Below are positions 10,701-28,188 of a stretch of DNA of 32,000 nt, one piece after another (within the stretch, counting starts at the first letter, position 1; the number at the start of each line of letters is the position of its first letter). The notes below the pieces were generated by a model. That model did not search any database and was not told the origin of the DNA. It was given only the letters and a program-made list of their open reading frames with translations. The DNA is from Bigelowiella natans nucleomorph (Eukaryota > Protista > Cercozoa): NCBI GenBank assembly GCA_000002455.1, contig DQ158856.1, positions 60,001 through 92,000 of the forward strand. The letters are read 5' to 3'. Made by a program: the position numbers and the translations under genes.

Positions 10701-12025
10701 CTATTAACTAAAACGTAATCATCTTGTTTTAAATTTCTCATAAATGGTAGACTTTTTAAAAAGTGATGACTCATCCTAGAATAATGTGGTCTAAAAACAT
10801 TATTTTCAAAAAACTTCATTAATTCAATTTTAAATAAAAAGACTGTTGAATATTTGTTGGGAGATTTTAAATTGTATTTAAAAAAAAATACTTCACAAGT
10901 TTTTCGTATTTGTGCATAAAGAAAAAACTTAAATATTGCTATATTTATTGATGATAAATAGTCATGTATTAGCAAAGATTTTGCTACAATTTTAGGTAAG
11001 CCTACTTCTCCCGATTTAATCAATGGGTCTGGAGTAGCCACAGATCTGCCACTAAAATTTACTCTTTTGCCTAGAATATTAGAACGGATTAAACCAATTT
11101 TTTTTTCAATTAATTTCTTAAATCTCTTAACTCTTGTTTGCTCATTATTAATATTAGATAATAGACTATAAATAATCTCAAGGTCACTTTTTTCATTGAA
11201 CTCGGAAAAGTTTTTTAAGCTATTCTTTGATTGAATGGCTAGATCAAATATTTTTTTAACTTTTTTGAAGTTATCTTTAATAGACTTTTTACTGATGCTC
11301 TCAGTAATGGTAGATTGATAATTATTAAAATAGCTATTTAAGTCATGAAATCTATAACTGAATAGCTCAAAATTTAAAAAAGAATATTTAGACTGAAAAA
11401 GGGTTAAAAAGAAAACAATATTATTCCTCGTACATTTTTTATAAAGTTCTTTAAACTCGTTTGAGGAAACACTGTAGTTAAAATATTTTTTTTTATCGTA
11501 GTCTTTTTTATAATTACTTTTATGCAAATTATTGTTCTCTTTAAAATTTTTGTTTTCTTGAACTTTTAAATTTATATTAGTTTTCAGTCTATGTAAGGCC
11601 GCTTTTTTTGATATATTTATAAAAAATTTATTGCATCTTAAACAGGAGTTTTTATTAGTTAATTGTAAGATACCCTTAGATTGGTTTATCTGTGAAGATA
11701 AAGGCATAAGTTTTGTGAAATCAATCGCATGTTTACTATGTTTTGTAGTCTTATAAAAGAGTTTACTTCTTTTTAGTTCCAAAAGTTCATCAAAATTGCA
11801 CATAAAACAATTAAAACATAATGATTTACAAAAGAATAATAAATTGGCACTTAAAGTTGAATTCATTATATAAAAAGGATATTTAAATTTTAAATCTTTA
11901 TTACTTTTAAAATTTGAATCAAGTCCTTTATTATCAGTCGATGTCTGTGTCAGATCATTTTTAGTTAGATTTACTAGCGTTGATTTAAAATTAATAAAAC
12001 GGATTAAATTTACTGGACCCTTCAT
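7747..12025 (-). CDS. rpa1: RNA polymerase I largest subunit, one 19-nt intron at 7960-7978
   Basis: GKRVNFSGRSV, NRQPTLH, YNLDFDGDE active site, bridge helix SRSGYLQR, trigger loop GEPLTQMTLNTFH. Intron GTAACTAAAAATATTTTAG joins SYMTFK|GFVIRMQ...ISFES...GTG C-terminus. KRVNF and SRSGYLQR indicate Pol I. Confidence 0.93.
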
Positions 12026-12059: not shown

Positions 12060-15000
12060 CTAAACGTCACTTTCTTCAACATTATTTTTATCATTATCGA
12101 AATAAAAGTCTCTAAAATGAAAAGGTCTGTGATAATCTTCGAAGTAATCAATTGGTATGCCAACTTTCAATGTGTAGTTCATTTCTGCATTAAAAGCCGA
12201 TTCAAAAAAATGATAGTTCCATAAATTATTTTTTGGAACCAAAAAAAAGCCTTGAAATTTGTTACTCAATGAGATTGATACTTTTCTTAGATATTTTTTT
12301 ATATTGTCTTTATCAAGCTTCTCAATATTTGTTGATAAAGAGTTTCTAAATCCTTCAGCGGTAAGTGAAAATGCTTTTAACGTACTGTAAGAATTTGAAA
12401 CAAATAGTATAACAAAGATTGATTTATTACCATTTAAACCATCAATATTAGTGATGAGTTTAGCGTGATATCTTAGATTCCTGCTGAGAATTTGATTCTC
12501 TGTATAGGCTGTTAAATGAATCCATCCAAGAATCTCAAAGTCATCAGTTGATTTGTGAGGAATGTGTTTTATTGCCATTGCTAACGACAGTCCAGAAACT
12601 AATTGAGGAGGTATACTTATGCAGATTATTTCTGATATATTATTAAATTCAATTGAATCTTTTCCGTAGATATAACCAAATGTTTCAGAACAAGTGTCAG
12701 AAATGCTTGCAAACTTTAAAACTAAATGCTTGCTAATCAAGAATATTCTACTATTTGCATTAAATTTTTCATTTTTGTTTATAAATAAATTTCTTACTAT
12801 TGCAAATGTATTTATTTTTTTTTGTAACCTCGATTTCCAATTTTTTTTTGATTTAAACTTTATTCTTTCGTATGGAGATTTAGTAAAACTTTTAATTACT
12901 ACATTATCTTTTGATACTGTTTTGCTCGATGTCATTTCTTTCTCATGTTTTATATTTGATGATGAATTAGACTTAGGTTTCAAATATTGTTCCAGGCCGA
13001 GTATTATATCCCTAATCTCCACTTGTGTCAAAGATGAAGTAGTTATTTTATGCCTTTGACAGTAATCATTGATAATTAAATCTTTCAAAATAACTTCGAC
13101 ATTAATCCATTCTTGTGCATCTAAATTAGGCCATAAGTATTTCGAGAACGATAAATTTTTATAATTGATATTTAGAATCGATATAGTTTTTTTATAATTA
13201 ATATGAAGACCTCTTAAAATTAGTAGTATACGAGCGAAAGCTGTATAAGAAGAAGAGTTTTTAAGCCAATTGTCATATATATTGAAAATTAACAACTTTG
13301 ATACTTTAGATTTTAATACAACATCATTAATATGATTTAATTTCATCAATGTGTAAAATGGAATAAGCAAATCGGTGCCAATTACTTTTATATTTGAAGT
13401 ATCTAATAAATGTACTTCTAAAGGTTCAAGTAAAACTTTTCTTGATACAATCAATTTTCCAGGTAGCTCTTCTTTAGGAATAGAATTTAGTAAACTGACT
13501 ATTTCTTCAGCACACTTCCATTTTGAATAATGTCCTAATCTTCTATGACCATCCCACAAACTAGAATGCATTATCTTTACAAATAATTGTCCAGTTCTAG
13601 GATTTATTATTAGAATAGCACCATTAATTGGTTTTGTTGCGAAATTACCTTCAGCTGTTTTATGTATAGTTACTCGATAAACATTCGTGTCATCAACAAA
13701 CCATACAACTTCATTCATGAATAAACTTCCATAATTTTTCGATGATAAGGATTGTGCACTAGGATCTGAGGAGTATAACTGCACTCCTTTTCGAATTCTT
13801 TCTCTTAATACAAATAAAGATGGATTTACTTTGATCAATTTAGATAAACACTGAATAAAAACTATTTTAATTCCCGGTATCCAATTTCCATATGCTGAGT
13901 ATAGATTATAGGCCAGGTCAAATCCTATCATTAATCCCGTTGTGCTAGGATAAATTGATTGAAGATCGGTACAAAAATCTAAGTATCTCGATCGAACATA
14001 TCTTTCAATGTCATGGGAATCGAAATCACCCCATCTTAATTGAATGTCTATCCAATATTTGCTTGTAAATTTTTGATCAAATACATCATTCAGATCAGAT
14101 ATTAAAGTTGTACTTGAGCAATGCCATAAAGAGTTACAGTATAAAACTATATCAGCACAAGACGAATTCATTTTGTAAGACTTTCTTGGATGTATAGTTT
14201 CTTTTTGAACAATTTCTATACCTAAGGTATCAGTTTGACTATCTAAAGTTTGAGCTAAATCAATTATCAAGCTTTCATGGATTTTTTGCCATAAATGTGC
14301 CCTGAATATTTGAATCAACGAGATTTTCAATGTAGGTATTTTCCCATGCATGAAAATACCAGTTAAATCAAGTTGTACTTGAAATCCTATATAAACATTA
14401 GCCCGATTTATTGTAGGTGACCACCATAATGTAAATCTTCGATTAGGTATTTGATTTAACCCTGTTCTCTGGGCATTAGTTAATTTTCGAAATTTCATGG
14501 TCTCCTCAAAGCCTGAAGATTTTTCCCAAAACAATCCTTCCCATGATGGAAAATATGTTCCTTTAAATAAAGTATGCTCGAGCATACCGTGTATACCTCC
14601 AAGAGCTTGAATAATATCAGTTTTATAGTTGAACAAATTCCAAAGTTTGCCATCATGCTTTTGATCAGTCCACCAAAATGGATTATATTTCAAAATATAA
14701 AACTTTTTAAAAATATTACGCATTCTCCACCCTTTATCATAGATTAAGAGAAATCTATCTTTCTGAAAAAGCGTATTGATTCTAGGAATTCCTTTATTCC
14801 AGTATGGTTCAAGATCTTCGATGGTTAGCTTCTTTTTTTTTTCTTTTGCTTCTTTTTTTTTCATACCATATTCTAGCCATGTTTGATACGACTCTATGAA
14901 TTCTTGATCCCAGTTTTTAATATATCTATAAATATTAGGAATGTTATTTTTATCACTTGCTTGCATACCAGCTTGAAAATGTGTTACAGCATGATCATCT

Positions 15001-18000
15001 TGATGAGAATATTTAAGATCTGATTTGGGGATATTTATATGACTCATAGATATGAGACCTAAGCCTCCCATCTCTTTCGGTGAATAAAATACTACTGATG
15101 GAAATCTAGCAGGCATTTTTGAATTTAAACCCATTTTTATTCTTGTTTGAATTTTAGTTTCACATTTGATTATTGTTTCCAGTAAAGAATAAGAGCCTTG
15201 AATGGCTTCACGAAAAAATGAGACCATTCCTATTAATGTTGTATTCCATTTATTTGATATTTTAGTAAAAGTAAGAGACCCCGAAGTCATTAAAATTTGC
15301 CTTATTCGATTTTCAAAGAAGTTAATAGATTTATCAGATACAGTTATTTTAAAGAGACGAGAATTAAGTTTTTTATAACTATCTGATATCAACCACTCAT
15401 TCTCTCTTTTTGCTACAACTCGAGAAGTATTTAAGTTATTTAGTTCAAACTTGCACTTAAAACCTAGCATATTAAAAGTAATGGGTCGATTAACTTTACT
15501 AATTATTTTTATATGAGTATTCATCCATTTCAGTTTAGAAAGACTATTAGGAATTCTATTTTTAATTTCATTGAAAACTGCCTTCGCTATTATCATATCT
15601 TTTAAGGAGTTAATATTTTTTTTATTCGGCCTATCATTTTCAGCTTTATCAAAAAGCATTGAATGTTCCTGCGTTTTATTAAATTTATAATTTTGTAAAT
15701 AATTACTAGTTATTTCGATCGCTTCTATTTTTGAGAGACGTAACAAAATAAATATCTCATCATTAATTCTATAAAATAACTTAATAGGATGGCTTGATTG
15801 ATTGTATTTTTGGTTTCTGTAATCATTACTCTTAGTATCTTTAGTCACGTTATTAAATTCATTCGCTTTTTTTGTTCCTAGTAATATGAGATCCATTATC
15901 AGATTAAATATCTGCACAATAAAAGAGCTGAACTGTAACCCTCTTATAACACCGTAAATATTTAAGTGAGTCATATCTTTATAGCTTATATAAATGTTAT
16001 TTTTCGATGTCATATACTCTGAAATATTATTATCAATTAAAATTTTTAAAATTCTATTTAAGATTGTATGATCTATGTGGGAAAAGGTTTCATCTAGATA
16101 AGTTTGAAAAATTAAAATTAATGAATCTGAGTTATTAGGTATAGTATCACTAAAGGTACCACTAATATTTTTACACCATCTATATAATAAATAAGGTGCT
16201 ATTTCTTTATCCGTAGGTTTTAACCAAAAAGGAAATAGACTTAACTTATCTACTTCAAACCATATAAAATGATCTAAAAATGAATCTGTAAGCTTTTCTA
16301 TTGAGTTTACATCATACACTGGAATTAGATAATCATAGTAGTCCATAAATTCAATATATACTTCTTTAAAAGATCTCTGAGTTAAAAGATGTCTTTTTAT
16401 CATATTAATTATCTCAGTATTATTGTCGTATGAATATTCCAGAAGCTCCATTTCTTCTTTTTGTTCTAGATTTAATTTTAAATTCATAGAAAATTGCTCT
16501 TTTAGATGATTAAGAGTTAATACCAAAAGTTTTGAACTAAACTTATACTCATTTGATGGAAAAGAAATTAGATTAAAATTATTGATATCCAACCAATGAA
16601 TCAAAATCCTATAAATTGTTATAACTTCTCTAACTTTAATGTATGGTCCTTCTTTTAAATATTTATGCTGTTTTTCTTGCTCTGATTTCAAGTATAGTCT
16701 AGTTAACCTACCTAAATTTTTCTTGCAGACAACTTTGTCTACAGTTGCTCCTTTTTTAATTCTTTCACGATTATAGTGAGCTATGTTTGTCCACCAATCC
16801 GCTTTTTGTTTTATATATTTTAGTATTATTTTTTCAATTTTAGGTGGCATATTTGGGACGATCCAAGAAATATTAGCCTTCCAACATCTCCAAGCTTCAC
16901 TTAAATGAGATAGTATTAGATTTGCTTTATTCAATTTAGTACTATCCGGTAGCAAGCTTAAAATCTCATGAATTACTGATGCTCTTAATTCTAAATCATA
17001 ATGGGACTCAACTCTTTGTTTAGTAACATTTTTCGCAATTTTATTTTCGGTTCTACCAAAAAATTGCCTTGATAATAAATTAAATAACCACTTCTCTAGT
17101 AAAGGAATTATTCCTCGCAAAAAAAATACCCAAACACGCCAAAGAGGAAACCAAAATCCTACTCCTGGTCCTTTACCAATTTCTCCTGTATTAAATCTAT
17201 AATGAATCAAATGTTTAAAATCTTTACAAATTCTGATCTGACGCATGACTCTATATTTATATCTATAAATTCCCGTTAAATGTCCTACATGACTAAAAAT
17301 ATAAAACAGACAATCAGCCAATTGATAAGCATCAACATTACCCAATCTAAACTGTATATTTGCATCAATAATTAACTTCGTTAATCTTAAAATTTCTCTT
17401 GTAAGATGGAAAGCGTTTCCAAATCTAGATTTTTTTCTCTCTTTCGTAGTTAATGTTTTAATAGGTTTTAAATTGAAATTGAAATCAAGATGTAAAAAAT
17501 TTAAACCCTTTTTATGAATTAACAAATTTAGCATATTGTAGCCTTGTTTGCATAAGTGGATTCCAGCCTCAACCCAATCTAATTTAGTAGATTGAAAAAA
17601 CTCATTTTTTTTCAATAAAGTCAATAAACTTGAAGAAGAGTTTTTTTGTATACTTTTTTTTGTTATCTTATTCATTATATATTTTTTTAAAAGTTTTTGA
17701 TAAGACACTCTCACCTTTTTAGGAAATTCTAAAGGACAATGTACCAAATACCAACTTCTAGTTATAGTAATATCCAATATTCTTTTTATCTCGGGATGTT
17801 GATTAGAAAAAGGTAGTGGAGCATAGGAAAGATTTAGTGCCTTAGAAGTATTTCGGTTGTATAATTTCAAAAAATCGAATAGAAACTTGAATCGCTTTGG
17901 TAATAAAATATCTTGCGCGTGCTTTTCTTCGATATTCTTGCTTTTAACCGAAAACAACATTGATTCCTCAAGAAATATTGGCAATTGAATATCTTCAATT

Positions 18001-18857
18001 TTCACTATATGACTTAATTGGTCAAGATAAATTTTGTCATCAATCAAATTTACGTTGGAATTATATAAATATGGATAATCAAGTTTATACTCGACTCTTA
18101 TTGGATAAGATACCATAGAACTATGGACTGTATAAGATGCTTTTTCAAGAATATCATCTTTTGTAAATTCTGTACTAATAGGTTCAAAACTTGGTCCACC
18201 AGGAACTATTAAATTTAAAGATTTTGCTATCAAAAAGCTTTCCAAATTAAATAGAAAATAATAGTTTATATCTACTATTTCCGTGATTATTTCCTGAGAT
18301 AACTCGCGTAATATTGATAGAGTTGATAAGTTAAAGTAATAACTCTTATCTTTAGTTTTTATTTTATTTAAAAGTTTATCAAGAGGTGAATAAAGCCATG
18401 ATAAGTTTTTTTTTGAAACACTTTTATGAATAACTTTTTTTATAGCCTCAAGTGGCTCAATATTTAATAAGCTTTGTGTGTAATCAAGCGGTTTTTCGTC
18501 ATCATCAAAAGATGGTAAACGCATTCGCTTAAAGTTTTTTCTATCTTTTTTTTCTTTTCGCATTTTCATCCATGTATTACCCCACCTTGCTAAAAATACT
18601 TGTAGAATTGTTTTAGGATTGGCATTTACAAAACTAATTGCTCCAGAAGAATGATAAAGAATTTCATTATATTGTATTTGTTCCCATGGCATTGGAATTG
18701 TTTCAATTATTTTGAAAATAGCATGAGGTAAGTACTTTAAAGCTGCAATATACACTCTTTTATCAATTGCGGCATCAATAGACTTTAGTCCATCTGTATT
18801 TTTAATAATTTTTCTTATATGTTCAGGTGAAACAATATTTTTAATGTTCGATGTCAT
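12060..18857 (-). CDS. prp8: Pre-mRNA splicing factor Prp8 (U5 snRNP), no intron detected
   Basis: PEHIRKII, LKYLPHA, KERKKSRFGNAFHL, PARFP, QIPNRRFTLWWSPTINRA, RNase H-like DDTNVYRV and C-terminal MPN domain. The track starts at TTG 18869; first ATG is at 18857. Confidence 0.99.
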   Translation of the reverse strand: MTSNIKNIVSPEHIRKIIKNTDGLKSIDAAIDKRVYIAALKYLPHAIFKIIETIPMPWEQIQYNEILYHSSGAISFVNANPKTILQVFLARWGNTWMKMRKEKKDRKNFKRMRLPSFDDDEKPLDYTQSLLNIEPLEAIKKVIHKSVSKKNLSWLYSPLDKLLNKIKTKDKSYYFNLSTLSILRELSQEIITEIVDINYYFLFNLESFLIAKSLNLIVPGGPSFEPISTEFTKDDILEKASYTVHSSMVSYPIRVEYKLDYPYLYNSNVNLIDDKIYLDQLSHIVKIEDIQLPIFLEESMLFSVKSKNIEEKHAQDILLPKRFKFLFDFLKLYNRNTSKALNLSYAPLPFSNQHPEIKRILDITITRSWYLVHCPLEFPKKVRVSYQKLLKKYIMNKITKKSIQKNSSSSLLTLLKKNEFFQSTKLDWVEAGIHLCKQGYNMLNLLIHKKGLNFLHLDFNFNLKPIKTLTTKERKKSRFGNAFHLTREILRLTKLIIDANIQFRLGNVDAYQLADCLFYIFSHVGHLTGIYRYKYRVMRQIRICKDFKHLIHYRFNTGEIGKGPGVGFWFPLWRVWVFFLRGIIPLLEKWLFNLLSRQFFGRTENKIAKNVTKQRVESHYDLELRASVIHEILSLLPDSTKLNKANLILSHLSEAWRCWKANISWIVPNMPPKIEKIILKYIKQKADWWTNIAHYNRERIKKGATVDKVVCKKNLGRLTRLYLKSEQEKQHKYLKEGPYIKVREVITIYRILIHWLDINNFNLISFPSNEYKFSSKLLVLTLNHLKEQFSMNLKLNLEQKEEMELLEYSYDNNTEIINMIKRHLLTQRSFKEVYIEFMDYYDYLIPVYDVNSIEKLTDSFLDHFIWFEVDKLSLFPFWLKPTDKEIAPYLLYRWCKNISGTFSDTIPNNSDSLILIFQTYLDETFSHIDHTILNRILKILIDNNISEYMTSKNNIYISYKDMTHLNIYGVIRGLQFSSFIVQIFNLIMDLILLGTKKANEFNNVTKDTKSNDYRNQKYNQSSHPIKLFYRINDEIFILLRLSKIEAIEITSNYLQNYKFNKTQEHSMLFDKAENDRPNKKNINSLKDMIIAKAVFNEIKNRIPNSLSKLKWMNTHIKIISKVNRPITFNMLGFKCKFELNNLNTSRVVAKRENEWLISDSYKKLNSRLFKITVSDKSINFFENRIRQILMTSGSLTFTKISNKWNTTLIGMVSFFREAIQGSYSLLETIIKCETKIQTRIKMGLNSKMPARFPSVVFYSPKEMGGLGLISMSHINIPKSDLKYSHQDDHAVTHFQAGMQASDKNNIPNIYRYIKNWDQEFIESYQTWLEYGMKKKEAKEKKKKLTIEDLEPYWNKGIPRINTLFQKDRFLLIYDKGWRMRNIFKKFYILKYNPFWWTDQKHDGKLWNLFNYKTDIIQALGGIHGMLEHTLFKGTYFPSWEGLFWEKSSGFEETMKFRKLTNAQRTGLNQIPNRRFTLWWSPTINRANVYIGFQVQLDLTGIFMHGKIPTLKISLIQIFRAHLWQKIHESLIIDLAQTLDSQTDTLGIEIVQKETIHPRKSYKMNSSCADIVLYCNSLWHCSSTTLISDLNDVFDQKFTSKYWIDIQLRWGDFDSHDIERYVRSRYLDFCTDLQSIYPSTTGLMIGFDLAYNLYSAYGNWIPGIKIVFIQCLSKLIKVNPSLFVLRERIRKGVQLYSSDPSAQSLSSKNYGSLFMNEVVWFVDDTNVYRVTIHKTAEGNFATKPINGAILIINPRTGQLFVKIMHSSLWDGHRRLGHYSKWKCAEEIVSLLNSIPKEELPGKLIVSRKVLLEPLEVHLLDTSNIKVIGTDLLIPFYTLMKLNHINDVVLKSKVSKLLIFNIYDNWLKNSSSYTAFARILLILRGLHINYKKTISILNINYKNLSFSKYLWPNLDAQEWINVEVILKDLIINDYCQRHKITTSSLTQVEIRDIILGLEQYLKPKSNSSSNIKHEKEMTSSKTVSKDNVVIKSFTKSPYERIKFKSKKNWKSRLQKKINTFAIVRNLFINKNEKFNANSRIFLISKHLVLKFASISDTCSETFGYIYGKDSIEFNNISEIICISIPPQLVSGLSLAMAIKHIPHKSTDDFEILGWIHLTAYTENQILSRNLRYHAKLITNIDGLNGNKSIFVILFVSNSYSTLKAFSLTAEGFRNSLSTNIEKLDKDNIKKYLRKVSISLSNKFQGFFLVPKNNLWNYHFFESAFNAEMNYTLKVGIPIDYFEDYHRPFHFRDFYFDNDKNNVEESDV

Positions 18858-18904
18858 AATTAAGCTCAACCAATTAATTAACTTTACTTTTAAAATGATG
18901 TTAA

Positions 18905-19815: not shown

Positions 19816-20240
19816 ATGTTGAAGCTATACAAAAAACAAATTGCATTAACCAATCCCTATTATCAAGGCACAACCACACATATTTTACTTGATTCAAATA
19901 TAATTGTCAGAAAATATACGGAAAAAGTACACATTTTTTTTTAAGTTGCCACTTAAGCATTCTATTAGAATTTCAATTGATTGTAAATGCTATTTTTACT
20001 TCACATCATGTATTTATAAAGAAATACTTTATCTAATTAAAAATAAAGTTTTGTTAAAACAATTTCTAAAGGTAAAAAAGAAAAAACAAGGTAAATAGAA
20101 TTCGATTAATAAATTGTTACCATAAATTTGTTTATGGTGACAAATGTATAAAAAACACAGTTTTTTTAAATCCTTTTCTAAGAGTTGCAACTTTTGATCA
20201 GAACTTATTAAAAAATTTAAAGTCAAAACTTAACAAATGA
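19816..20240 (+). CDS. fcf1: rRNA-processing PIN endonuclease Fcf1/Utp24, introns 19927-19945 and 20072-20090 (19 nt each)
   Basis: HILLDSN, KCYFYFTSCIYKEI, CYHKFVYGDKCI and VATFDQNL align with Fcf1 HILVDTN, KCIPCITDCVMAEI, CTHKGTYADDCL and VATVDRDL. Confidence 0.85.
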
Positions 20241-20260
20241 TAAAAATAAAATAGATCTAA

Positions 20261-21204
20261 TTAATAATTTAAGTTATATGAAATATTTTCATACTGGTTG
20301 TTTAATGACACTTTATTCATTTCTTTCATTAAGATAACATCATTCGGACATGAAAAACATTGTCCCAAAGGTCCTGGAGCTAGAAATCCTGTGTTAAAAG
20401 AATATAATATTGGATGTTGCATGTTTATAAAAGTATACGAATTATTTACAAATTTGCTATGGATTTTAGAATTAGGCTTGAATGTAAACATTCTAGTTCG
20501 TACTAAAATATTTTTTAACTCGCACAACAATCCCCTAATTTAAGTTAAGTTTACTTCAACTCCATTGTACTGCATATTCCATTAATTGATAAATTTGAGG
20601 ATTCTGCCAAATTGGCATGTAAATCATTGTTAGAAAAAGTACCTATTTTGGTACTTTTTGCTACGTAATTTTTTGACAACATCCATGCTTTTTTATAGCT
20701 GAAACCATTTCTAATCAATTCAAAAAATTTATCAAGTTTAATTTTAATTCCACATCTAAATACTATAAATATACCCTTGCTCTTTCCCAAAATTAAATTC
20801 ACCCAAATATAATTCACCTTTAACTGAGCTAAAAAAAAGTCCCAAGCCATGAGCGAAACCAGCATGCAATTCACCTTCATATCTTAATAAATTTATATAA
20901 CCTATCATAAAGTCCATATCTTGTTAAACCTGCTGCTGATACATTACCCATTACAATTGTTCCTTTTCCATGTGGTATATCTTCAAGAGTTAATCCTTCA
21001 TAACTTTTTTAATGAATTAAACCTCGTTCCATCATCAAATATCCAACTATTCCATTTAAAAGAATTTCCTTTAAAAGCAGATAAAGGATGATTTGATAAC
21101 AAGTATAGATCATTATCTATTATTGAATCAGAATATTTTCTTACTACTCCTTTACCAACGAACTCGTTTTCCATCCAGAATAAACGATTTGCAGCAGCTA
21201 CCAT
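20261..21204 (-). CDS. tic100: MORN-repeat protein, TIC100/EMB1211-like (~288 aa), introns 21004-21022, 20883-20901, 20756-20774 (19 nt each) and 20535-20554 (20 nt)
   Basis: Three MORN repeats (FDDGTSYEGLTLEDIPHGKG; YEGELHAGFAHGLG; YLGEFNFGKEQGCG) followed by RMFTFKP...QHPILY...FLAPGPLGQCFSCP, resembling TIC100 RMFVNKP...QHPYFY...WMAPGFINQFYEVP as recalled. Confidence 0.78.
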
Positions 21205-21280: not shown

Positions 21281-21584
21281 ATGCTTAGAGAGGGCCAAAA
21301 AAAAAGGCTTCCCAATGGCAATACCCCAAGATGGTCAGAACTAGAAAACTATATATTTTTTAATGTTATCTCTATTATAAAAGGCTATTAAAGAATTCGG
21401 TATGAATTACTCTATTATAAGTAATTTATTAATCAATAAATGCTATAGACAAATAAAACGTAAAATAAAACGCGAAATTGAAATCAATGAATCACTTTTC
21501 AGAATACTACTTCACTGTAAATCCAATAGTCGTATGAGGAAAAAATTAATAAAACTTATATATTTTAATAAAATGCAAAACTAA
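21281..21584 (+). CDS. bdp1: Minimal SANT/Myb protein, TFIIIB subunit B''/BDP1-like (~94 aa), 19-nt intron at 21365-21383
   Basis: RWSELENYIFFN|AIKEFGMNYSIISNLLINKCYRQIKRKIKRE matches the BDP1 SANT pattern WSxxETxxFFxAIxxxGTDFSMIxQLFPxRxRxxIKNKFKRE. Confidence 0.75.
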
Positions 21585-22546
21585 TTTTCTGATAGTTTAG
21601 TTAAAAAAACTCCCAAAAAATATAGTCCAATAAGTGGTAAGCATGTAATCAATTGTGTTACAGGATCTGTAGTTGGGGTAATCACAGCTGCAGCTATTGA
21701 ACAAATTATGATGACATATCTCCACTGAGAAAGCATTTGATTAGAAGTTACTAATTTACTTTTTCCCAAAATAACTAAAATAATTGGAATCTAATTATTG
21801 CAATTGTACCTGAAATCCTATACCGGTAGAAAACATAAGTTTTATATAAAAATCAAAATACTGCTTAATGGAGAGAGTCGATTCTACCAAGCCGTCGGAG
21901 TAAGTAGAAAAAAAATTAAGGGCAAAAGGACTTAGAATATAATATGAAAAGATTAACCTATTTACTTCATTTAAACCCTAATACAAATAAAAAAATCGAT
22001 CCGAGAATAATAGGAATATAAAAATTTTTTTCATTTTTTGTTAAACCTGGTATAGTATAAGAACTAATTTGATAGACTAGAGAAGGAAAACTACAAATAA
22101 TACCAAAATTTATTGCAATCTGAATTTTTTTTTAATTAACTTCTAAACTAGTAAAAAAAAATTCTCCAGGATTTAATTGTAAAAAACTATAATTGTTTTT
22201 TAAGCCGTTAATTTCAAAAGCGATCAATAAATCTTTGGAAATGGATAAACAAATACAAAAAGATAAAAATATATTGATTATACTAATTAAAATTCTCTCT
22301 CTTAGTTCATCAATGTGATAATTTACAGTTTGCTTTTGAATCTGGTTATCCAAAATCTGATCAGGTATACACAAAGCTTCTATTTATTCTTATAAAACCA
22401 TGATGAGATTTTTTTTTGAAAAATATTTTTTTACTTTTGTTAATGATTGAATTTCTATTATTTTTAGTTATTAAAAGTTTCTGATTATTCTTTTGTAAAA
22501 ATATGTTGCGGCTAATAGATATGCTAAATCTTGCATTCTTAATCAT
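21581..22546 (-). CDS. tatC: Plastid twin-arginine translocase TatC, introns 22380-22398, 22120-22140 (21 nt), 21958-21976, 21791-21809
   Basis: Basic N-terminal extension, then [22 protein letters not shown]...PGLTKNE, GFQ|IP, WRY...[14 protein letters not shown]. Confidence 0.96.
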
Positions 22547-22588
22547 AGAGTTAAATATTAATATTTTATATAATTTTTGTTTTATTTA

Positions 22589-23442
22589 TCACTTATTAAA
22601 AGAATAATAGAAGGAAGCCCAATTAATATTTGATTTTTTTACACTTCTAACTTTCTTACAATTTTTAATGGACGGTTTAAAACTATCTCTACAATTCAAA
22701 ACTCTATCAATTATTCCATATTCTTTTGCCTCTAACGGGGTCATGTATCTAATTTTATATTTATTACTTATCTCGATCGGTATCTGATTCTATCATTGAT
22801 AGTGACTGATCTGTAAATTTAGACAATAAATAATTTATATTATTTCTGTGATATAAGAGTTCCTTGACCTAAAATTAAATTTAGATACTTGAATTTCAAT
22901 ATCTACCGCATTACCCTGTATTCCTCCTATTGGTTGATGTATCATTATTCTAGTATTAGGAGTTGAAAATCTTAAACCGTTTGTTCCCGAAGCTAACAAA
23001 AATGCACCCATTGAAGCGGCTAGACCTAATGAAATTGTATTAGTAGATTTATTTGTCCAGACAATAGCATCATATAATGCTAAACCAGCCATAATGCTAC
23101 CACCTCATAAGAATATTTCTAACCTGGAGAGTTTATACATAGTTTTATACTACTATTATTATCTTTATAAGATAAAAATAAAATACTATTAATCAAAGAA
23201 TTGACTAACTGATCATTTATCTCGCCAGTACAAAATAGAAAATTATTATTTTCAAAAAAATCTGAAATATCAAGTAAATCATCATAGGTCGATGCAAAAT
23301 GTTTAATGTTTTTACGATATTTATTATTAAAATCTAGATTAACAAAATGATTCTTAGTTAATCTTCTAGACCACAAGCTACCAATAGCTCGAGAACTGTT
23401 ATTAATATAACTATTTTGACTTTTAATTCTTGGTGTTGGCAT
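22589..23442 (-). CDS. clpP: Plastid ClpP protease subunit, introns 23104-23123 (20 nt), 22869-22888 (20 nt), 22749-22767 (19 nt)
   Basis: S/R/N-rich transit-peptide-like leader, INSPG|[13 protein letters not shown] (Ser), IMIHQP (His), DTDRDKYM (Asp), EAKEYGIID. Confidence 0.96.
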
Positions 23443-23552
23443 TTAACTAAAGTAGAATCCTTGCTTGGATCTTTAATTTAATACTGATCAATTAATAGTT
23501 TTTTCAATTAATACTACTTATAATTATTACTACAAGTAGAAAAATAAGTTTT

Positions 23553-25022
23553 ATGATAACCAAAACAAACTATAAAGCTAAACTAACTACATACACAATA
23601 AAGAAAAATTGCATAAAAAAAATCTCATTTAGAACTTTTCAGCAAACTGAAAGCTATAAATATAAATTAAAATCATTTTCTGAATGTGAAACTATTCGAA
23701 AATCATTGAATAGTAACACTTTAAAGTCTATATCCTTAAAGAATCTAGAACCGCTATGGATTATCAAATTTAGACTGGATGCTCTGAAATCGTTATACAA
23801 CAGAGACACCCCAAAGTGGTCAGAATTTAATAGTTACAATTTTGATATCAATAACTCTATTTATTACTCAGCTTTAATCAAAAAAGACACTGCATTAGTT
23901 AGTTCGAATAACGAAACAAGTATTATTTCGTCATCGTCAAAGAAAAAAACAGCTATTGATTTAGTATTGGATTCTATTTCTATTGATACTTCTTATCAAA
24001 AAGAATTGGGTAAGCATGGTGTGATTTTCACTAATTTATCAAATTCTTTAAAAAATTATTCGGACTTAATCAGTAATTTTATGGGAAGTGTAGTATCACT
24101 AAGAGACAATTATTATACAAGCCTAAATTCCGCAGTTTTTTCTGAAGGCTCATTCATCTATATCCCAGCTAATCTAGTATGCCCACTAGATTTATCGACA
24201 TACTTCAGAATTAATGGAAATGTTATCGGACAGTTTGAAAGGACTTTAATAGTAACAGAGAAAAATGCCAGCGTCACTTACCTTGAAGGATGTACTGCAC
24301 CTTATTTTACAGAAAACCAGCTTCATGCTGCTGTAGTTGAGCTTTGCGCAGAGGAAGGCTCAGAGATTAAATACTCCACTGTTCAAAATTGGTATCCTGG
24401 AGACTCTATGGGCAAAGGAGGTATTTTTAATTTTGTTACTAAAAGAGGGCTATGTAACGGGTCTAGATCAAAAATATCTTGGACACAAGTAGAAACAGGA
24501 TCATCCTTAACATGGAAATATCCTAGTGTAATACTAAAGGGTGATAACTCGGTAGGAGAGTTTTATTCAATTGCCCTTACTAAATTAAGACAACAAGCGG
24601 ATACTGGTTCTAAGATGATACATATCGGTCGAAAAACATTTAGCAAAATAATTTCTAAAGGGATCTCCTTAGGAAATTCAAAAAATTGTTATAGAGGGCT
24701 AGTATTAATTCACAATAAATCATTAAAATCCAAAAATACTACTCAGTGTGACTCAATAATTTTTGGTGACAGTTCTTCGGCTAATACTTATCCATATGTC
24801 ACCGTCAGAGATTCCTCTGCGTGGCTTGAACATGAAGCTAGTATTGCTAGGATTCAAGATGACCAAGTTTTTTATTTACAACAACGTGGTTTAGGATTTG
24901 AAGAAGCTATAAACTTAATAGTTGGAGGCTTTTGCAAAGAAGTCATAGAGGAACTGCCTTTTGAATTTTTAACCGAGGTAAATGAGCTATTAAATTCGTC
25001 AATGATTAAAAAAATCGGTTAA
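23553..25022 (+). CDS. sufB: Plastid Fe-S cluster assembly scaffold SufB
   Basis: LNSAVFSEGSF, STYFRIN, GQFERTL, YLEGCTAP, QLHAAVVE, YSTVQNWYPG, NFVTKRG, QADTGSKM, with a ~30-aa basic leader. Confidence 0.98.
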   Translation: MITKTNYKAKLTTYTIKKNCIKKISFRTFQQTESYKYKLKSFSECETIRKSLNSNTLKSISLKNLEPLWIIKFRLDALKSLYNRDTPKWSEFNSYNFDINNSIYYSALIKKDTALVSSNNETSIISSSSKKKTAIDLVLDSISIDTSYQKELGKHGVIFTNLSNSLKNYSDLISNFMGSVVSLRDNYYTSLNSAVFSEGSFIYIPANLVCPLDLSTYFRINGNVIGQFERTLIVTEKNASVTYLEGCTAPYFTENQLHAAVVELCAEEGSEIKYSTVQNWYPGDSMGKGGIFNFVTKRGLCNGSRSKISWTQVETGSSLTWKYPSVILKGDNSVGEFYSIALTKLRQQADTGSKMIHIGRKTFSKIISKGISLGNSKNCYRGLVLIHNKSLKSKNTTQCDSIIFGDSSSANTYPYVTVRDSSAWLEHEASIARIQDDQVFYLQQRGLGFEEAINLIVGGFCKEVIEELPFEFLTEVNELLNSSMIKKIG

Positions 25023-25062
25023 TCTATTTAATGTTTTACTATTTAATTAAAGTTTTACATCT

Positions 25063-25562
25063 ATGAACAAAACAGAAAATCAAAAAAATTGTAGCACAAT
25101 TTTAAAAAGTAGCTGGATATTACTGGGACTAATAGTAAAATAAAATCTTATAGATAAATAAGCTTAAAGAAAAAGAAATAAATAGTGATTTAATTTCTAA
25201 TGTATATGAAAAAAGTAATTTGACAAGAATTAGTTTCATTATGTGTTTCCCAAGAAGAAAAAATACAATTATTAAATTTTCTAAAATCTTTTGATTATAC
25301 TACTTATATTTCAAGAGGAGAAAAAAAAATTGATCAATTAAACCAACTATTAACCAATAATTTAAAAAACCAAGTGGCTAATTCAGAAATACAAGAGAAT
25401 AAAAAAGCCTCAACACAACCTAACAGTTTATGCTGCTCAACTACAACTCAAAATGAATCAGAAGTAATAGAAAATATAAAAAGGAAAGTTTACCTTCTTT
25501 ATTTGATTGATAGAAATATGAAACTTTTACAAGTGATCTCTAGTGCTTTAAAATTTAATTGA
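25063..25562 (+). CDS. Hypothetical protein (~153 aa), introns 25135-25153 and 25215-25233 (19 nt each)
   Basis: Two mini-introns join ATG 25063 in frame to ORF 25374-25562. Confidence 0.55.
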
Positions 25563-26067
25563 TAATACAAAACTAAAATAAATTTAATAAATAATTTTAG
25601 AATACGAAATTCTTTAAGTTATTTCAGATTATTTAAAAATAAAATTATTGTTAGACTGTATTAACTTCCTTTTTATCCAAGTTTATTTTACCATTGTAAT
25701 TTATTATACTTAATGTGCAATAAAATAGAAAACTATAATATAAAGCTCTCAAACGACCAGATAATATTGTTCTTCAAAACAATAAAGAAAAAAAATAATC
25801 TAGTTAAAGGTAAAAAGGAAACCATAAAAAACCTAATCAGTAATAAAAGTATACTACTTATTGTATAGTTTCTTTTCTGATTATTGCATCTAACTGCTTA
25901 ATTGATACAAAATTACATATTTTTCACTATTGTCTGTTATATAAAGTAAAATTTTGTTTTTTTTCTGGAAGTAACATAACTAATTATAGATTCAAAAGAA
26001 TTAGGACAACTATGCGATCTTAAACATAAAGCATGTATATTAGGAATATTAAGAAATTAATAGTAAT

Positions 26068-26147
26068 GTCTCAATAGCGCAGTGGTAGCGCGTCGGTCTC
26101 ATATACCAATTATCCGAAAGTCGTGAGTTCAATCCTCACTTGAGACA
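26068..26147 (+). tRNA. trnM: Elongator tRNA-Met(CAT) with an 8-nt intron at 26104-26111
   Basis: Acceptor GTCTCAA/TTGAGAC, TCGGT-CTCATA[TACCAATT]A-TCCGA, T-arm GTGAG-TTCAATC-CTCAC. Mature length 72 nt. Confidence 0.92.
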
Positions 26148-26155
26148 CTTAATTT

Positions 26156-26485
26156 TCAATCTGGTACTCTTATTCTATGCAAACCACATTTTTTAATTTT
26201 AATTATAGAATCGTTCGCAGTAGTTATACTATTCATACCGATATTATAGAACTTTAAAAAATTCAGATGATTTTTATAGAAATAAATTTTTAATACTTTA
26301 AGCACAAATCTTTAATGATTTTAATACTTCCCATTCGTACAATTTTTTATTACGATTGTACTTTTTTTATAAATTCGTATTGAAAATATATTATTATTTA
26401 TTCTAAAGCGCGCTAAAAATTTTCCTATTTCGAATATATTAATAATGTTATATAAAATTATATTTTTAAATTCAATAACTATCAT
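26156..26485 (-). CDS. Probable divergent 60S ribosomal protein eL22 (~103 aa), 18-nt intron at 26310-26327
   Basis: MIVIEFKNIILYNIINIFEIGKFLARFRINNN...KSTIVI...FVLKVLKIYFYKNHLNFLK is colinear with eL22 FTLDC...IMD...EQFLQERIKVN...KSKITV...[20 protein letters not shown]. Identity is low. Confidence 0.5.
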
Positions 26486-26538
26486 TGTATCTCAGCTTTA
26501 AATTAAAATGTTTCTACATAATTAGTTAAATATCTTTT

Positions 26539-28188
26539 TTACATATTTAAAAAATTTGCACTTGAAATAGTTCCTGTGACTTTAGAAATCTTACTAATTT
26601 TTTTATAGTGTCTTTTACTGATAACAGCTTGAGTATGCATTAAAACACTTGATATTTTACACAGAGAGATCAATGAGTTATATAAAAGCAATGAAGGATC
26701 TACAACACCTTCTCCCACTAGGTTAGTAAGACATTTATATTCAGCATCGTAACCTATTTCAAAAGGATAGTTTACAATCTTCTTTTCCATCAAATAACCA
26801 TCTTCATCAGAATTTAGAATGATATTTCTATTCGGAACTACTATTGATTTTCTCAACAATTGCATTCCCAGCGATTCTTCCATACAGCTAGATAAAGCCA
26901 TAAAATATTTCAAAAAATTAGATAAATGAACAAGAGAGACAGCTGAACCCGTAACTACTCCCTGAGTAACAGCTGAAAATGTGGCATTTTTAGCGTCTTC
27001 TAATCTTAATTTTTTATCAATCAGTTCCAATTCAGTTGGTGCACCAACTCGAATAACTGCTATACCACCAGATAATTTTGCTATTCTTTCCGATAATAAA
27101 TTTGTTTCAAAAGTACTATCTGTACTTGAAAGAAGTTTCTCTAAATAATCTATTCGAGATTTGATTTGATTTTTAAAACGATTTTTAGAGATCAATGTAC
27201 AATTATTCTCAGATACAATACATTTTCTTAATGAACCAAAATCTTCTGGTTTTAAATTTTTTAATTTCATACCTGAATCTGATGAATAAAAAGAAGCCCC
27301 TGTTGCAATGGATATATCTTGTAAAATTGATTTTCTATAACTACCGAAAGAAGGAATTTTAACGGCGCATATTTTTATATTTTTTTCTTTATTGTTTACT
27401 AAAAAGGCATTTAGACACTTTTTAGATATAGTATCTGAAATAATAAGCAATGGCTTATCAATCTGTAGAATAGATTGCATTATTGCAGCTGCTTGTTTAA
27501 TACTATCTATAGGTAAATCAGTCACGAGAATTGCGCTATCATTATATTCACAGGTTGAGTTTTTAAAATTGTTTATAAACTTGTGAGAAACATAACCTCT
27601 GTCAATCTGAAGACCTCCATAAACTATCAAAGATGTATCATTCTTATCAGACGTTTCTATAGAAATTAATCCATCCGTACCGACTCTTTTATATGCATTC
27701 ACAATTAATTTACCGAGTAATTTGTCACCACCGCTTGAATTAGTTGCAATGTTTAATATATCTTTATTGTTATTCAGAGGCCATGATATTTTGTACAGTT
27801 TATTTAATAAGATATTTGTGCATTTAAAAATCCCATTGCTAAAAAAATAAGGTGTATAACCAGAGTGAATTAAACTAAGCCCTCTCGAAAGAACATTCCC
27901 AGTGAGAATACCTGTAGTAGATGTACCATCACCAACAGAATCATTTACATTAAAAATAACATCCTTGACTAAAAACTGACCAATATGCTCGACAAAATTT
28001 TGGTTATTAATTTTATTAATAATAGAAGTACCATCATTAATAATCTGCGGTTTTGAGGTTTTATCCCACAGTACAATATTTTTACCTCTTGGTCCAAGTG
28101 TAAGACTTAATATATTCGTAGTATCTTGTAAACCTTTTTTAATTTGTTTTATAATGACATCTCTGTAGCAAATATTTTTTATTTTCAT
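26539..28188 (-). CDS. cpn60: Plastid chaperonin 60, alpha-type, divergent
   Basis: TLGPRGKN, GDGTST, IDRGY, ERIAKLSGGIAVI. KLRLEDAKNATF is characteristic of the alpha subunit. Confidence 0.95.
   Translation of the reverse strand: MKIKNICYRDVIIKQIKKGLQDTTNILSLTLGPRGKNIVLWDKTSKPQIINDGTSIINKINNQNFVEHIGQFLVKDVIFNVNDSVGDGTSTTGILTGNVLSRGLSLIHSGYTPYFFSNGIFKCTNILLNKLYKISWPLNNNKDILNIATNSSGGDKLLGKLIVNAYKRVGTDGLISIETSDKNDTSLIVYGGLQIDRGYVSHKFINNFKNSTCEYNDSAILVTDLPIDSIKQAAAIMQSILQIDKPLLIISDTISKKCLNAFLVNNKEKNIKICAVKIPSFGSYRKSILQDISIATGASFYSSDSGMKLKNLKPEDFGSLRKCIVSENNCTLISKNRFKNQIKSRIDYLEKLLSSTDSTFETNLLSERIAKLSGGIAVIRVGAPTELELIDKKLRLEDAKNATFSAVTQGVVTGSAVSLVHLSNFLKYFMALSSCMEESLGMQLLRKSIVVPNRNIILNSDEDGYLMEKKIVNYPFEIGYDAEYKCLTNLVGEGVVDPSLLLYNSLISLCKISSVLMHTQAVISKRHYKKISKISKVTGTISSANFLNM

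What the first reader, a model, noticed from the sequence alone, without database searches (positions are those of the whole stretch)
20261..21204. Nucleomorph-encoded TIC100-like subunit of the green-lineage TIC complex, hidden by four mini-introns
Seen: splicing yields ~288 aa with three MORN repeats and a downstream RMFxxKP...QHP..Y....APG...Q....P block. Established: that combination marks TIC100/EMB1211, part of the Tic20-Tic56-Tic100-Tic214(Ycf1) import complex of green plants and algae, where the protein is several times longer. No obvious transit peptide precedes it, consistent with an intermembrane-space subunit. Inference: this secondary plastid keeps a miniaturised Ycf1-type TIC complex partly encoded in the nucleomorph, a possible reason the nucleomorph persists. 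It could easily be annotated as hypothetical or PIP5K-like; I cannot check whether it has been reported.
Basis: partly seen in the sequence, partly recalled or inferred. Interest (0 to 1): 0.85.

Follow-up and report, generated by a model that had tools for sequence, protein, structure and literature searches.

The report
Nucleomorph-encoded Tic100 plastid import subunit
A small five-exon gene in the relict nucleus (nucleomorph) of the alga Bigelowiella natans, publicly labelled only "Morn repeat protein 1", is a trimmed version of Tic100, a scaffold protein of the green-plant chloroplast import machine, which suggests this secondary plastid still uses that machine.

Summary
A minus-strand gene at 21204..20261 has five exons and four GT..AG introns of 19, 19, 19 and 20 nt, and encodes 288 aa. 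It is identical to the public record "Morn repeat protein 1 (nucleomorph) [Bigelowiella natans]", so the gene model was already known; only its function was not.

The Tic100 reading is supported.
- The last exon alone matches Chlamydomonas Tic100 (PDB 7vcf_T, residues 729-808, E 3.7e-10), outside the MORN repeats.
- Exons 1, 2 and 3 match residues 255-372 in the same order.
- The whole public protein scores E 1.3e-46 against Tic100, against 4e-7 for generic MORN proteins.
- An AlphaFold model of an 86%-identical relative has Tic100 chains as its top three Foldseek hits.

Orthologues sit at the same place in other chlorarachniophyte nucleomorphs. Free-living green algae have Tic100 proteins of about 400-430 aa, so the shrinkage is mostly loss of the C-terminal tail.

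The partners are present. The nucleomorph also encodes Toc75, Tic20 and a Tic56 homologue 17 kb away, and a paper reports a plastid YCF1.

No paper I could search links Tic100 to chlorarachniophytes. This is a new member of a known kind. Localisation and binding remain untested.

The parts
21023..21204 (-). Exon 1 (residues 1-60 plus two bases of codon 61). It has a short N-terminus with no presequence and holds the conserved VGKG...SNHPxSxFxG..xKW..W motif that precedes the MORN sheet.
   Evidence: Matches Chlamydomonas Tic100 residues 255-301, the only PDB hit (E 0.036). Exact match to P0059 residues 1-60.
21004..21022 (-). Intron 1, 19 nt, GT..AG.
   Evidence: A probable RNA contig (run X1) lacks exactly these 19 nt. 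The junction residue is S61 in P0059.
20902..21003 (-). Exon 2 (residues 61-95): first MORN-like repeat, YEGLTLEDIPHGKG.
   Evidence: Tic100 residues 304-330, E 0.42; generic MORN proteins score similarly. Exact match to P0059 residues 62-94.
20883..20901 (-). Intron 2, 19 nt, GT..AG.
   Evidence: The junction residue is R95 in P0059. The X1 contig ends at 20902, the last base of exon 2.
20775..20882 (-). Exon 3 (residues 95-131): second and third MORN-like repeats.
   Evidence: Best PDB hit is Tic100 residues 340-372 (E 5.3e-6). Pfam MORN E 4e-4 on the exon alone and 22.6 bits on the whole protein.
20756..20774 (-). Intron 3, 19 nt, GT..AG.
   Evidence: The junction residue is G131 in P0059.
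20555..20755 (-). Exon 4 (residues 131-198): invariant GCG, two helices and a further hairpin. It ends where Chlamydomonas Tic100 carries its ~280-residue middle insert.
   Evidence: No PDB hit alone. It aligns within the full-protein match to Tic100 residues 256-435 and across the family.
20535..20554 (-). Intron 4, 20 nt, GT..AG.
   Evidence: The junction residue is K198 in P0059.
20261..20534 (-). Exon 5 (residues 198-288 plus TAA): Tic100-specific C-terminal block. The invariant residues R212 M213 K217 P218 Q237 P239 T246 P251 G252 P253 G255 Q256 P261 lie at about 20345-20494.
   Evidence: Alone it hits Chlamydomonas Tic100 residues 729-808 at E 3.7e-10. It also finds 43 proteins with the same block among 1.84 billion representatives; those inspected are Tic100-like.
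20161..20260 (-). 3' untranslated region with two poly(A) addition sites, near 20216 and 20161. It runs into the convergent neighbouring gene.
   Evidence: Raw RNA reads of run X24 have loose T-runs just before 20216 and 20161, and read depth extends down to about 20191.

Best explanation
The gene encodes the chlorarachniophyte orthologue of Tic100, inherited from the green-algal endosymbiont and kept in the nucleomorph.

Shown:
- It is transcribed, spliced at four mini-introns and polyadenylated.
- The 288-aa product keeps the conserved Tic100 core. That core is the pre-MORN motif, the MORN beta-sheet domain and the first part of the C-terminal helical domain with the RMF..KP / PGPxGQ block.
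- It lacks the charged C-terminal tail and terminal helix that other green-lineage Tic100 proteins have.

Inferred:
- It is made in the periplastidial compartment, the remnant algal cytosol.
- Like other Tic100 proteins it has no N-terminal presequence and would enter the space between the two inner plastid membranes.
- There it would intertwine with plastid-encoded Ycf1/Tic214 and sit beside Tic56, forming the intermembrane-space scaffold. That scaffold links the Toc75 channel to the Tic20/Tic214 channel, so that imported precursors cross both membranes in one supercomplex.
For: Sequence:
- Exon-by-exon matches to Chlamydomonas Tic100 (7vcf_T) are in the same order as in Tic100: E1 to 255-301, E2 to 304-330, E3 to 340-372, E5 to 729-808.
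- The public protein P0059, identical to the exons, scores E 1.3e-46 to Tic100. The next hit, MORN1, scores 4e-7, and Arabidopsis TIC100 scores 2e-5.
- It shares 38% identity over 256 aa with the Neomeris (Ulvophyceae) homologue, E 1e-64.
- 37 columns are invariant across 14 family members.

Reciprocity: the Neomeris protein finds only this locus in the 373-kb nucleomorph genome.

Fold: an AF2 model of the 86%-identical P0047 (pLDDT 74.9, core above 85) has Tic100 chains 7vcf_T (E 1.6e-15, TMq 0.63), 7xzi_E and 8z9y_D as its top three PDB hits.

Conservation:
- Orthologues exist in the Lotharella oceanica, L. vacuolata and Amorphochlora nucleomorphs.
- They form one split with 100/100 support.
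- The L. oceanica gene has the same neighbours, TatC-Morn1-Fcf1-L2-Prp8.

Expression: and the MMETSP transcript.

Partners:
- Nucleomorph Toc75.
- Tic20 (PMC3017389).
- A Tic56 homologue with E 4.9e-23 to 7vcf_Q.
- Plastid YCF1 (PMC1523203).

The role of Tic100 as an intermembrane scaffold intertwined with Tic214 comes from the cryo-EM paper.
Against: - There is no localisation or interaction data for any chlorarachniophyte Tic100.
- The protein lacks the C-terminal helix that in Chlamydomonas binds the Tic56 N-terminal helix and Ctap3, so part of the known interface is missing.
- The lineage sits on a long branch (stem 1.15 changes per site).
- B. natans YCF1 is described as unalignable, and I could not examine it.
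- Toc159 and Toc34 are reported absent from B. natans (PMC3542566), so the supercomplex must differ from the Chlamydomonas one.
- The structure model was built on an 86%-identical relative, not on the window's own protein.
Confidence: 0.85

Rival explanations
1. It is a Tic100-derived protein that has taken on another job. In a cell that lacks Toc159/Toc34 and has two extra membranes, the trimmed protein might work elsewhere. Examples are the periplastidial side of the outer envelope, or a lipid-binding MORN adaptor, rather than a TOC-TIC bridge.
For: Loss of the C-terminal tail and terminal helix in all eight chlorarachniophyte sequences. No presequence. Reported absence of Toc159/Toc34. No known translocon for the second membrane, with Derlins located only in the ER.
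Against: - The strongest conservation lies in the parts that build the Tic214/Tic56-facing core.
- Free-living green algae also lack a presequence on this protein.
- Toc75, Tic20, Tic56 and YCF1 are all retained, which is what a working complex predicts.
Confidence: 0.1
2. It is a generic MORN-repeat protein (of the MORN1, RSPH1, junctophilin, PIP5K or ARC3 type), as the public name 'Morn repeat protein 1' implies, with no tie to protein import.
For: Pfam recognises only a MORN repeat. Exon 2 alone scores slightly better against flagellar and apicomplexan MORN proteins than against Tic100.
Against: - Exons 1 and 5, which hold no MORN repeat, hit only Tic100.
- There is a gap of about 39 orders of magnitude between Tic100 and the best generic MORN protein.
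- Foldseek ranks Tic100 chains first.
- All 43 hits of exon 5 in 1.84 billion representatives share the same block.
Confidence: 0.02
3. It is a decaying relic: a Tic100 remnant that is still transcribed but no longer functional.
For: Truncated C-terminus. Fast-evolving genome. Long branch.
Against: - The frame is intact across four introns in every species.
- 37 columns remain invariant against distant green algae despite the long branch.
- Position is conserved between genera.
- Transcripts are spliced and polyadenylated.
Confidence: 0.03

Closest known systems
Chlamydomonas reinhardtii Tic100 (Cre06.g300550; PDB 7vcf chain T, 7xzi/7xzj)
   Same: Matches in the same order over residues 255-435 (pre-MORN motif plus the beta-jellyroll/MORN domain) and 715-808 (start of the C-terminal helical domain), with E 1.3e-46. 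It is the best fold match.
   Different: The algal protein is 955 aa. The nucleomorph protein lacks the N-terminal helical domain (about residues 1-254), the middle helical domain (about 436-714) and the C-terminal tail with the helix that binds Tic56 and Ctap3.
Arabidopsis thaliana TIC100 / EMB1211 / CUE8 (At5g22640; PDB 8z9y chain D)
   Same: Three MORN motifs in a beta-sheet domain. An intermembrane-space subunit of the 1-MDa Tic20-Tic56-Tic100-Tic214 complex. Third-ranked fold hit, E 1.1e-7.
   Different: It is 871 aa. Direct sequence similarity is weak (E 2e-5, MORN region only). Function is shown genetically in Arabidopsis and is untested here.
Short Tic100 homologues of core chlorophytes: Neomeris dumetosa (Ulvophyceae, 419 aa), Pedinophyceae sp. 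YPF-701 (CAG9466398.1, 410 aa), Tetraselmis striata (398 aa)
   Same: The same core from the first residues to the YNL motif, nearly gap-free (38% identity over 256 aa with Neomeris). They also have no N-terminal or middle helical domains and no presequence.
   Different: They keep a tail of about 110-140 aa (a charged stretch plus a terminal helix ending in a basic RxPRLxRP-like motif). All chlorarachniophyte proteins lack this tail. They are nucleus-encoded in free-living algae.
'Morn repeat protein 1' of other chlorarachniophyte nucleomorphs (Lotharella oceanica, L. vacuolata, Amorphochlora amoebiformis)
   Same: True orthologues: about 50% identity (53% measured for L. oceanica), the same length class (295-312 aa as annotated), the same truncated C-terminus, and the same neighbours in L. 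oceanica.
   Different: Only the species differs. None is annotated as Tic100.
Generic MORN-repeat proteins (apicomplexan/trypanosome MORN1, RSPH1, junctophilins)
   Same: MORN hairpin repeats. E 4e-7 to 1e-2 over residues 46-139. Foldseek E about 1e-6.
   Different: Nothing corresponds to exon 1 or exon 5, and their biology is unrelated.

Membership tests
Tic100 (green-lineage TIC subunit) | Sequence homology to experimentally defined Tic100 that extends outside the MORN repeats | tested here: met
   Exon 5 alone matches 7vcf_T residues 729-808 at E 3.7e-10. Exon 1 matches residues 255-301. The whole protein scores E 1.3e-46 in two stretches that follow the Tic100 order.
Tic100 (green-lineage TIC subunit) | MORN motifs forming the beta-sheet (jellyroll) domain | tested here: met
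   One Pfam MORN repeat at the cut-off. Three YxGx..G.G units by eye. Seven strands at residues 50-137 in the model of the 86%-identical P0047. Tic100 chains are the top fold hits.
Tic100 (green-lineage TIC subunit) | Conserved C-terminal block RMF..KP ... Q.P..Y...T....PGPxGQ....P | tested here: met
   All of these residues are invariant in the 14-sequence alignment, which spans chlorarachniophytes, Ulvophyceae, Pedinophyceae, Tetraselmis and Chlorophyceae.
Tic100 (green-lineage TIC subunit) | C-terminal helix that pairs with the Tic56 N-terminal helix and Ctap3 | tested here: not met
   All chlorarachniophyte sequences stop right after the YNL motif. The tail and terminal helix present in the other green-lineage sequences are absent (the role of the helix is). 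This is a difference within the family rather than an exclusion, because the homology elsewhere is unambiguous.
Tic100 (green-lineage TIC subunit) | N-terminal and middle alpha-helical domains of the Chlamydomonas structure | tested here: not met
   Absent here. They are equally absent from the Neomeris, Pedinophyceae and Tetraselmis homologues, so they do not define the family.
Tic100 (green-lineage TIC subunit) | Co-occurrence with Tic20, Tic56, Tic214/Ycf1 and Toc75 | tested here: met
   Toc75: nucleomorph ORF of 737 aa, E 4.8e-20 to 7vcf_B. Tic20: weak exon-wise Pfam hit, plus PMC3017389. Tic56: G000:C1:98586-98990, E 4.9e-23 to 7vcf_Q. YCF1: from the literature only (PMC1523203).
Tic100 (green-lineage TIC subunit) | Location in the intermembrane space and physical membership of the TIC / TOC-TIC complex | not testable with these tools
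   The one complex prediction, with the Toc75 POTRA region, gave no answer.
Generic MORN-repeat proteins (MORN1, RSPH1, PIP5K, ARC3 type) | Similarity explained by MORN repeats alone | tested here: not met
   The regions without MORN repeats match Tic100 only. Generic MORN proteins trail by about 39 orders of magnitude.

The most novel reading that the evidence does not exclude
Every non-plastid-encoded core subunit of the green Ycf1-type translocon (Toc75, Tic20, Tic56, Tic100) may have stayed in the nucleomorph, although so far all four are shown only in B. natans (Tic100 in four species, Tic56 in two). None has been shown to have moved to the host nucleus, though host genomes were not searched here.

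Tic100, and probably Tic56, lack a presequence and enter the intermembrane space from the periplastidial side. A host-nucleus copy might therefore be unable to reach its destination.

If so, these translocon genes would be untransferable, and would be a concrete reason why the nucleomorph persists. B. natans would also offer a natural minimal TOC-TIC supercomplex, without GTPase receptors and with a 288-aa Tic100.
Probability: 0.25. Interest if true: 0.8.

Novelty: new member of a known kind. Interest (0 to 1): 0.62.

Why it matters
[quoted passage not shown] Recognising 'Morn repeat protein 1' as Tic100 changes that count. So does recognising a nearby gene as Tic56; its L. oceanica orthologue is labelled 'RNA binding protein'.

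Together they suggest that the whole Tic20-Tic56-Tic100-Tic214 core survived a secondary endosymbiosis. This bears on three things:
- The debate on how general the 1-MDa TIC complex is.
- What the minimal functional Tic100 is. The 288-aa core marks the indispensable part.
- Why nucleomorphs persist.

It also gives a directly testable target for work on protein import in chlorarachniophytes.

Tried and rejected
All searches on the window's own sequence were made exon by exon, by reference. Full-length work used the public records P0059 and P0047 that the database tools returned.
- Complex prediction of P0059 with the nucleomorph Toc75 N-terminal 340 residues gave no answer (score 0.00). This is no evidence either way.
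- Exon 4 alone gave no meaningful PDB hit.
- The Pfam Ycf1 model found nothing in the nucleomorph, but it also rang in no control genome, so this is uninformative. The plastid genome is not in the assembly.
- The Pfam MORN model found nothing in the six-frame genome search, because the repeats are short and split by introns.
- Rogers 2007 (plastid genome) and Gilson 2006 (nucleomorph genome) are not held in the library. The presence of YCF1 rests on one sentence in PMC1523203.
- I considered that loss of the Tic100 C-terminal helix reflected loss of Tic56. I rejected this, because a Tic56 homologue is present.
- The position of chlorarachniophyte Tic100 among green algae is unresolved in the tree, so no donor lineage is claimed.
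- Literature searches for Tic100 with nucleomorph, Bigelowiella or chlorarachniophyte, and for nucleomorph with MORN, returned only unrelated mentions. Closed-access literature could not be searched.

Full report
**What is in the sequence**

The assembly has 372,870 bp in three contigs, and the window is contig 1, positions 60001-92000. The matching public protein comes from the 140,590-bp chromosome of the Bigelowiella natans nucleomorph.

On the minus strand an ATG at 21204 opens a reading frame. It is interrupted four times by GT..AG segments of 19, 19, 19 and 20 nt, at 21022..21004, 20901..20883, 20774..20756 and 20554..20535. Removing them gives an 867-nt CDS of 288 codons ending in TAA at 20263..20261. 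Introns of 18-21 nt are the norm in this genome (PMC6009652).

Every search on the window's own sequence was made exon by exon, by reference.

The gene model is independently confirmed:
- The public protein P0059, 'Morn repeat protein 1 (nucleomorph) [Bigelowiella natans]' (ABA27197.1, Q3LWG8), contains the five exon translations exactly. One residue sits at each split codon: S61, R95, G131, K198.
- The same protein is on record from an MMETSP transcript.
- A transcript-derived protein of a close relative (P0047, 86% identical) has the same junctions without any indel.

**Expression**

Raw RNA-seq reads of the same species label cover the last exon. They carry untemplated T-runs before 20216 and 20161, which means poly(A) tails on minus-strand transcripts. 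A probable RNA contig lacks exactly the 19 nt of intron 1 and ends at the last base of exon 2. The gene is therefore transcribed, spliced and polyadenylated.

**What it is**

Against all PDB sequences the exons behaved as follows.

| Exon | Match in Chlamydomonas Tic100 (7vcf_T) | E-value | Note |
|---|---|---|---|
| 1 | residues 255-301 | 0.036 | only hit |
| 2 | residues 304-330 | 0.42 | generic MORN proteins score slightly better |
| 3 | residues 340-372 | 5.3e-6 | best hit |
| 4 | none | - | no meaningful hit |
| 5 | residues 729-808 | 3.7e-10 | only significant hit (one chance-level match at E 0.28) |

The matches follow the order of Tic100. The full public protein P0059 scores E 1.3e-46 against Tic100 in two stretches, 14-191 to 256-435 and 187-278 to 715-808. 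The next hit, MORN1, scores 4.3e-7, and Arabidopsis TIC100 (8z9y_D) scores 1.9e-5.

An exhaustive HMMER search of 1.84 billion representatives with exon 5 found 43 proteins. Those I inspected all carry the same block downstream of MORN repeats.

An AlphaFold2 model was built on a 32-sequence alignment for the 86%-identical P0047 (mean pLDDT 74.9, residues 50-215 mostly above 85). Foldseek ranks 7vcf_T first (E 1.6e-15, TMq 0.63), then 7xzi_E and Arabidopsis 8z9y_D. Generic MORN proteins start at about 1e-6.

In the other direction, the Neomeris homologue finds only this locus in the nucleomorph genome.

**Anatomy compared with the family**

The alignment has 37 invariant columns. They include two cysteines (C132, C192), RMF..KP and Q.P..Y...T....PGPxGQ....P.

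In the published structure, Chlamydomonas Tic100 has four domains: N-terminal helical, beta-jellyroll with the MORN motifs, middle helical and C-terminal helical. It intertwines with Tic214 in the intermembrane space. Its C-terminal helix pairs with the Tic56 N-terminal helix and with Ctap3.

The nucleomorph protein keeps the pre-MORN motif, the beta domain and the first, conserved part of the C-terminal domain.

The N-terminal and middle domains are missing. They are equally missing from Neomeris (Ulvophyceae, 419 aa), Pedinophyceae sp. YPF-701 (410 aa) and Tetraselmis striata (398 aa).

What is specific to chlorarachniophytes is the loss of the tail of roughly 110-140 residues, including the terminal helix. 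So the miniaturisation relative to the likely donor is about 30%, not several-fold.

The N-terminus leaves only about 13 residues before the first conserved motif. The free-living algae are the same, so the absence of a presequence is a family trait. This fits an intermembrane-space location.

**Conservation**

Orthologues named 'Morn repeat protein 1' exist in the nucleomorphs of Lotharella oceanica, L. vacuolata and Amorphochlora amoebiformis. Eight chlorarachniophyte sequences form one split with 100/100 support on a long stem.

In L. oceanica the gene lies in the order ClpP-TatC-(gap)-Morn1-Fcf1-L2-Prp8. The window matches where checked: TatC lies at its upstream side, and a 2269-aa ORF sits where Prp8 lies in L. 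oceanica.

**Partners**

- The nucleomorph encodes a 737-aa Toc75 (Pfam Omp85; E 4.8e-20 to 7vcf_B).
- It encodes Tic20 (a weak exon-wise hit; stated in PMC3017389).
I tested it. The 134-aa ORF at G000:C1:98586-98990 matches Chlamydomonas Tic56 (7vcf_Q, residues 129-205, E 4.9e-23) and Arabidopsis TIC56 (E 9.7e-16). It has a GYF_2 domain. Its L. oceanica orthologue is labelled 'RNA binding protein'.
- PMC1523203 states that the B. natans plastid genome encodes a YCF1, described as unalignable.

So the complete Tic20-Tic56-Tic100-Tic214 core plus Toc75 is accounted for, split between the nucleomorph and the plastid. Toc159 and Toc34 are reported absent.

**Mechanism**

Shown: gene structure, expression, homology, fold and co-occurrence of partners.

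Inferred: the protein is made in the periplastidial compartment and enters the intermembrane space. There, together with Ycf1 and Tic56, it builds the scaffold that couples Toc75 to the Tic20/Tic214 channel.

One complex prediction, with the Toc75 POTRA region, gave no answer and counts neither way.

**Novelty**

The gene and its introns are public, but the function is not. Full-text searches for Tic100 with nucleomorph, Bigelowiella or chlorarachniophyte, and for nucleomorph with MORN, gave only unrelated mentions.

Nucleomorph papers count 17 plastid-associated genes and two translocases. I cannot exclude a report in closed-access literature.

**Verdict**

This is a new member of a known kind, with a notable trimmed form. 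The idea that such genes explain nucleomorph persistence remains speculative.

Noticed in passing
G000:C1:98586-98990, minus strand (L005:1587-1991), about 6.6 kb beyond the window's end: A 134-aa ORF with a GYF_2 domain matches Chlamydomonas Tic56 (7vcf_Q, E 4.9e-23) and Arabidopsis TIC56 (E 9.7e-16). Its L. oceanica nucleomorph orthologue is labelled 'RNA binding protein'. A short downstream exon may follow, but I did not model it.
   Followed up: partly
window 20161-20260: The poly(A) sites of the Tic100 transcript (about 20216 and 20161) lie inside the 3' end of the convergent neighbouring gene (19816-20240, Fcf1-like). The two genes therefore have overlapping 3' ends and only 20 nt between their stop codons.
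   Followed up: no
P0044 (Amorphochlora amoebiformis) and P0045 (Lotharella vacuolata), alignment A1 columns about 313-318 and 361-367: The annotated orthologues carry 6-7 extra hydrophobic residues exactly at the positions of introns 1 and 2. These are probably 18- or 21-nt in-frame introns left unspliced in the public annotation.
   Followed up: no
window 20752-20754 (C132) and 20572-20574 (C192): Two cysteines are invariant in all 14 aligned Tic100 homologues. A disulphide in the intermembrane space is conceivable, but I did not test it.
   Followed up: no
window 21581-28188: Neighbouring plastid-related genes: the last TatC exon (21584-21769, Pfam E 4e-10), SufB (23553-25022) and Cpn60 (26539-28188). 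Further on are Hsp90 (29463-31550), and upstream an RNA polymerase largest subunit (7946-12025) and a 2269-aa ORF (12060-18869) at the position of Prp8 in L. oceanica.
   Followed up: partly
window 20462 and 21297: One DNA-like run (X18) shows G>A at 20462, inside exon 5, and a 1-nt deletion at 21297 in the spacer. This is probably strain variation.
   Followed up: no
window 20855-20930: In run X1 a 76-nt contig (depth about 517) spans intron 2 unspliced. The flanking exon contigs have depths of about 1900-2800. This suggests some intron retention or DNA carry-over.
   Followed up: no
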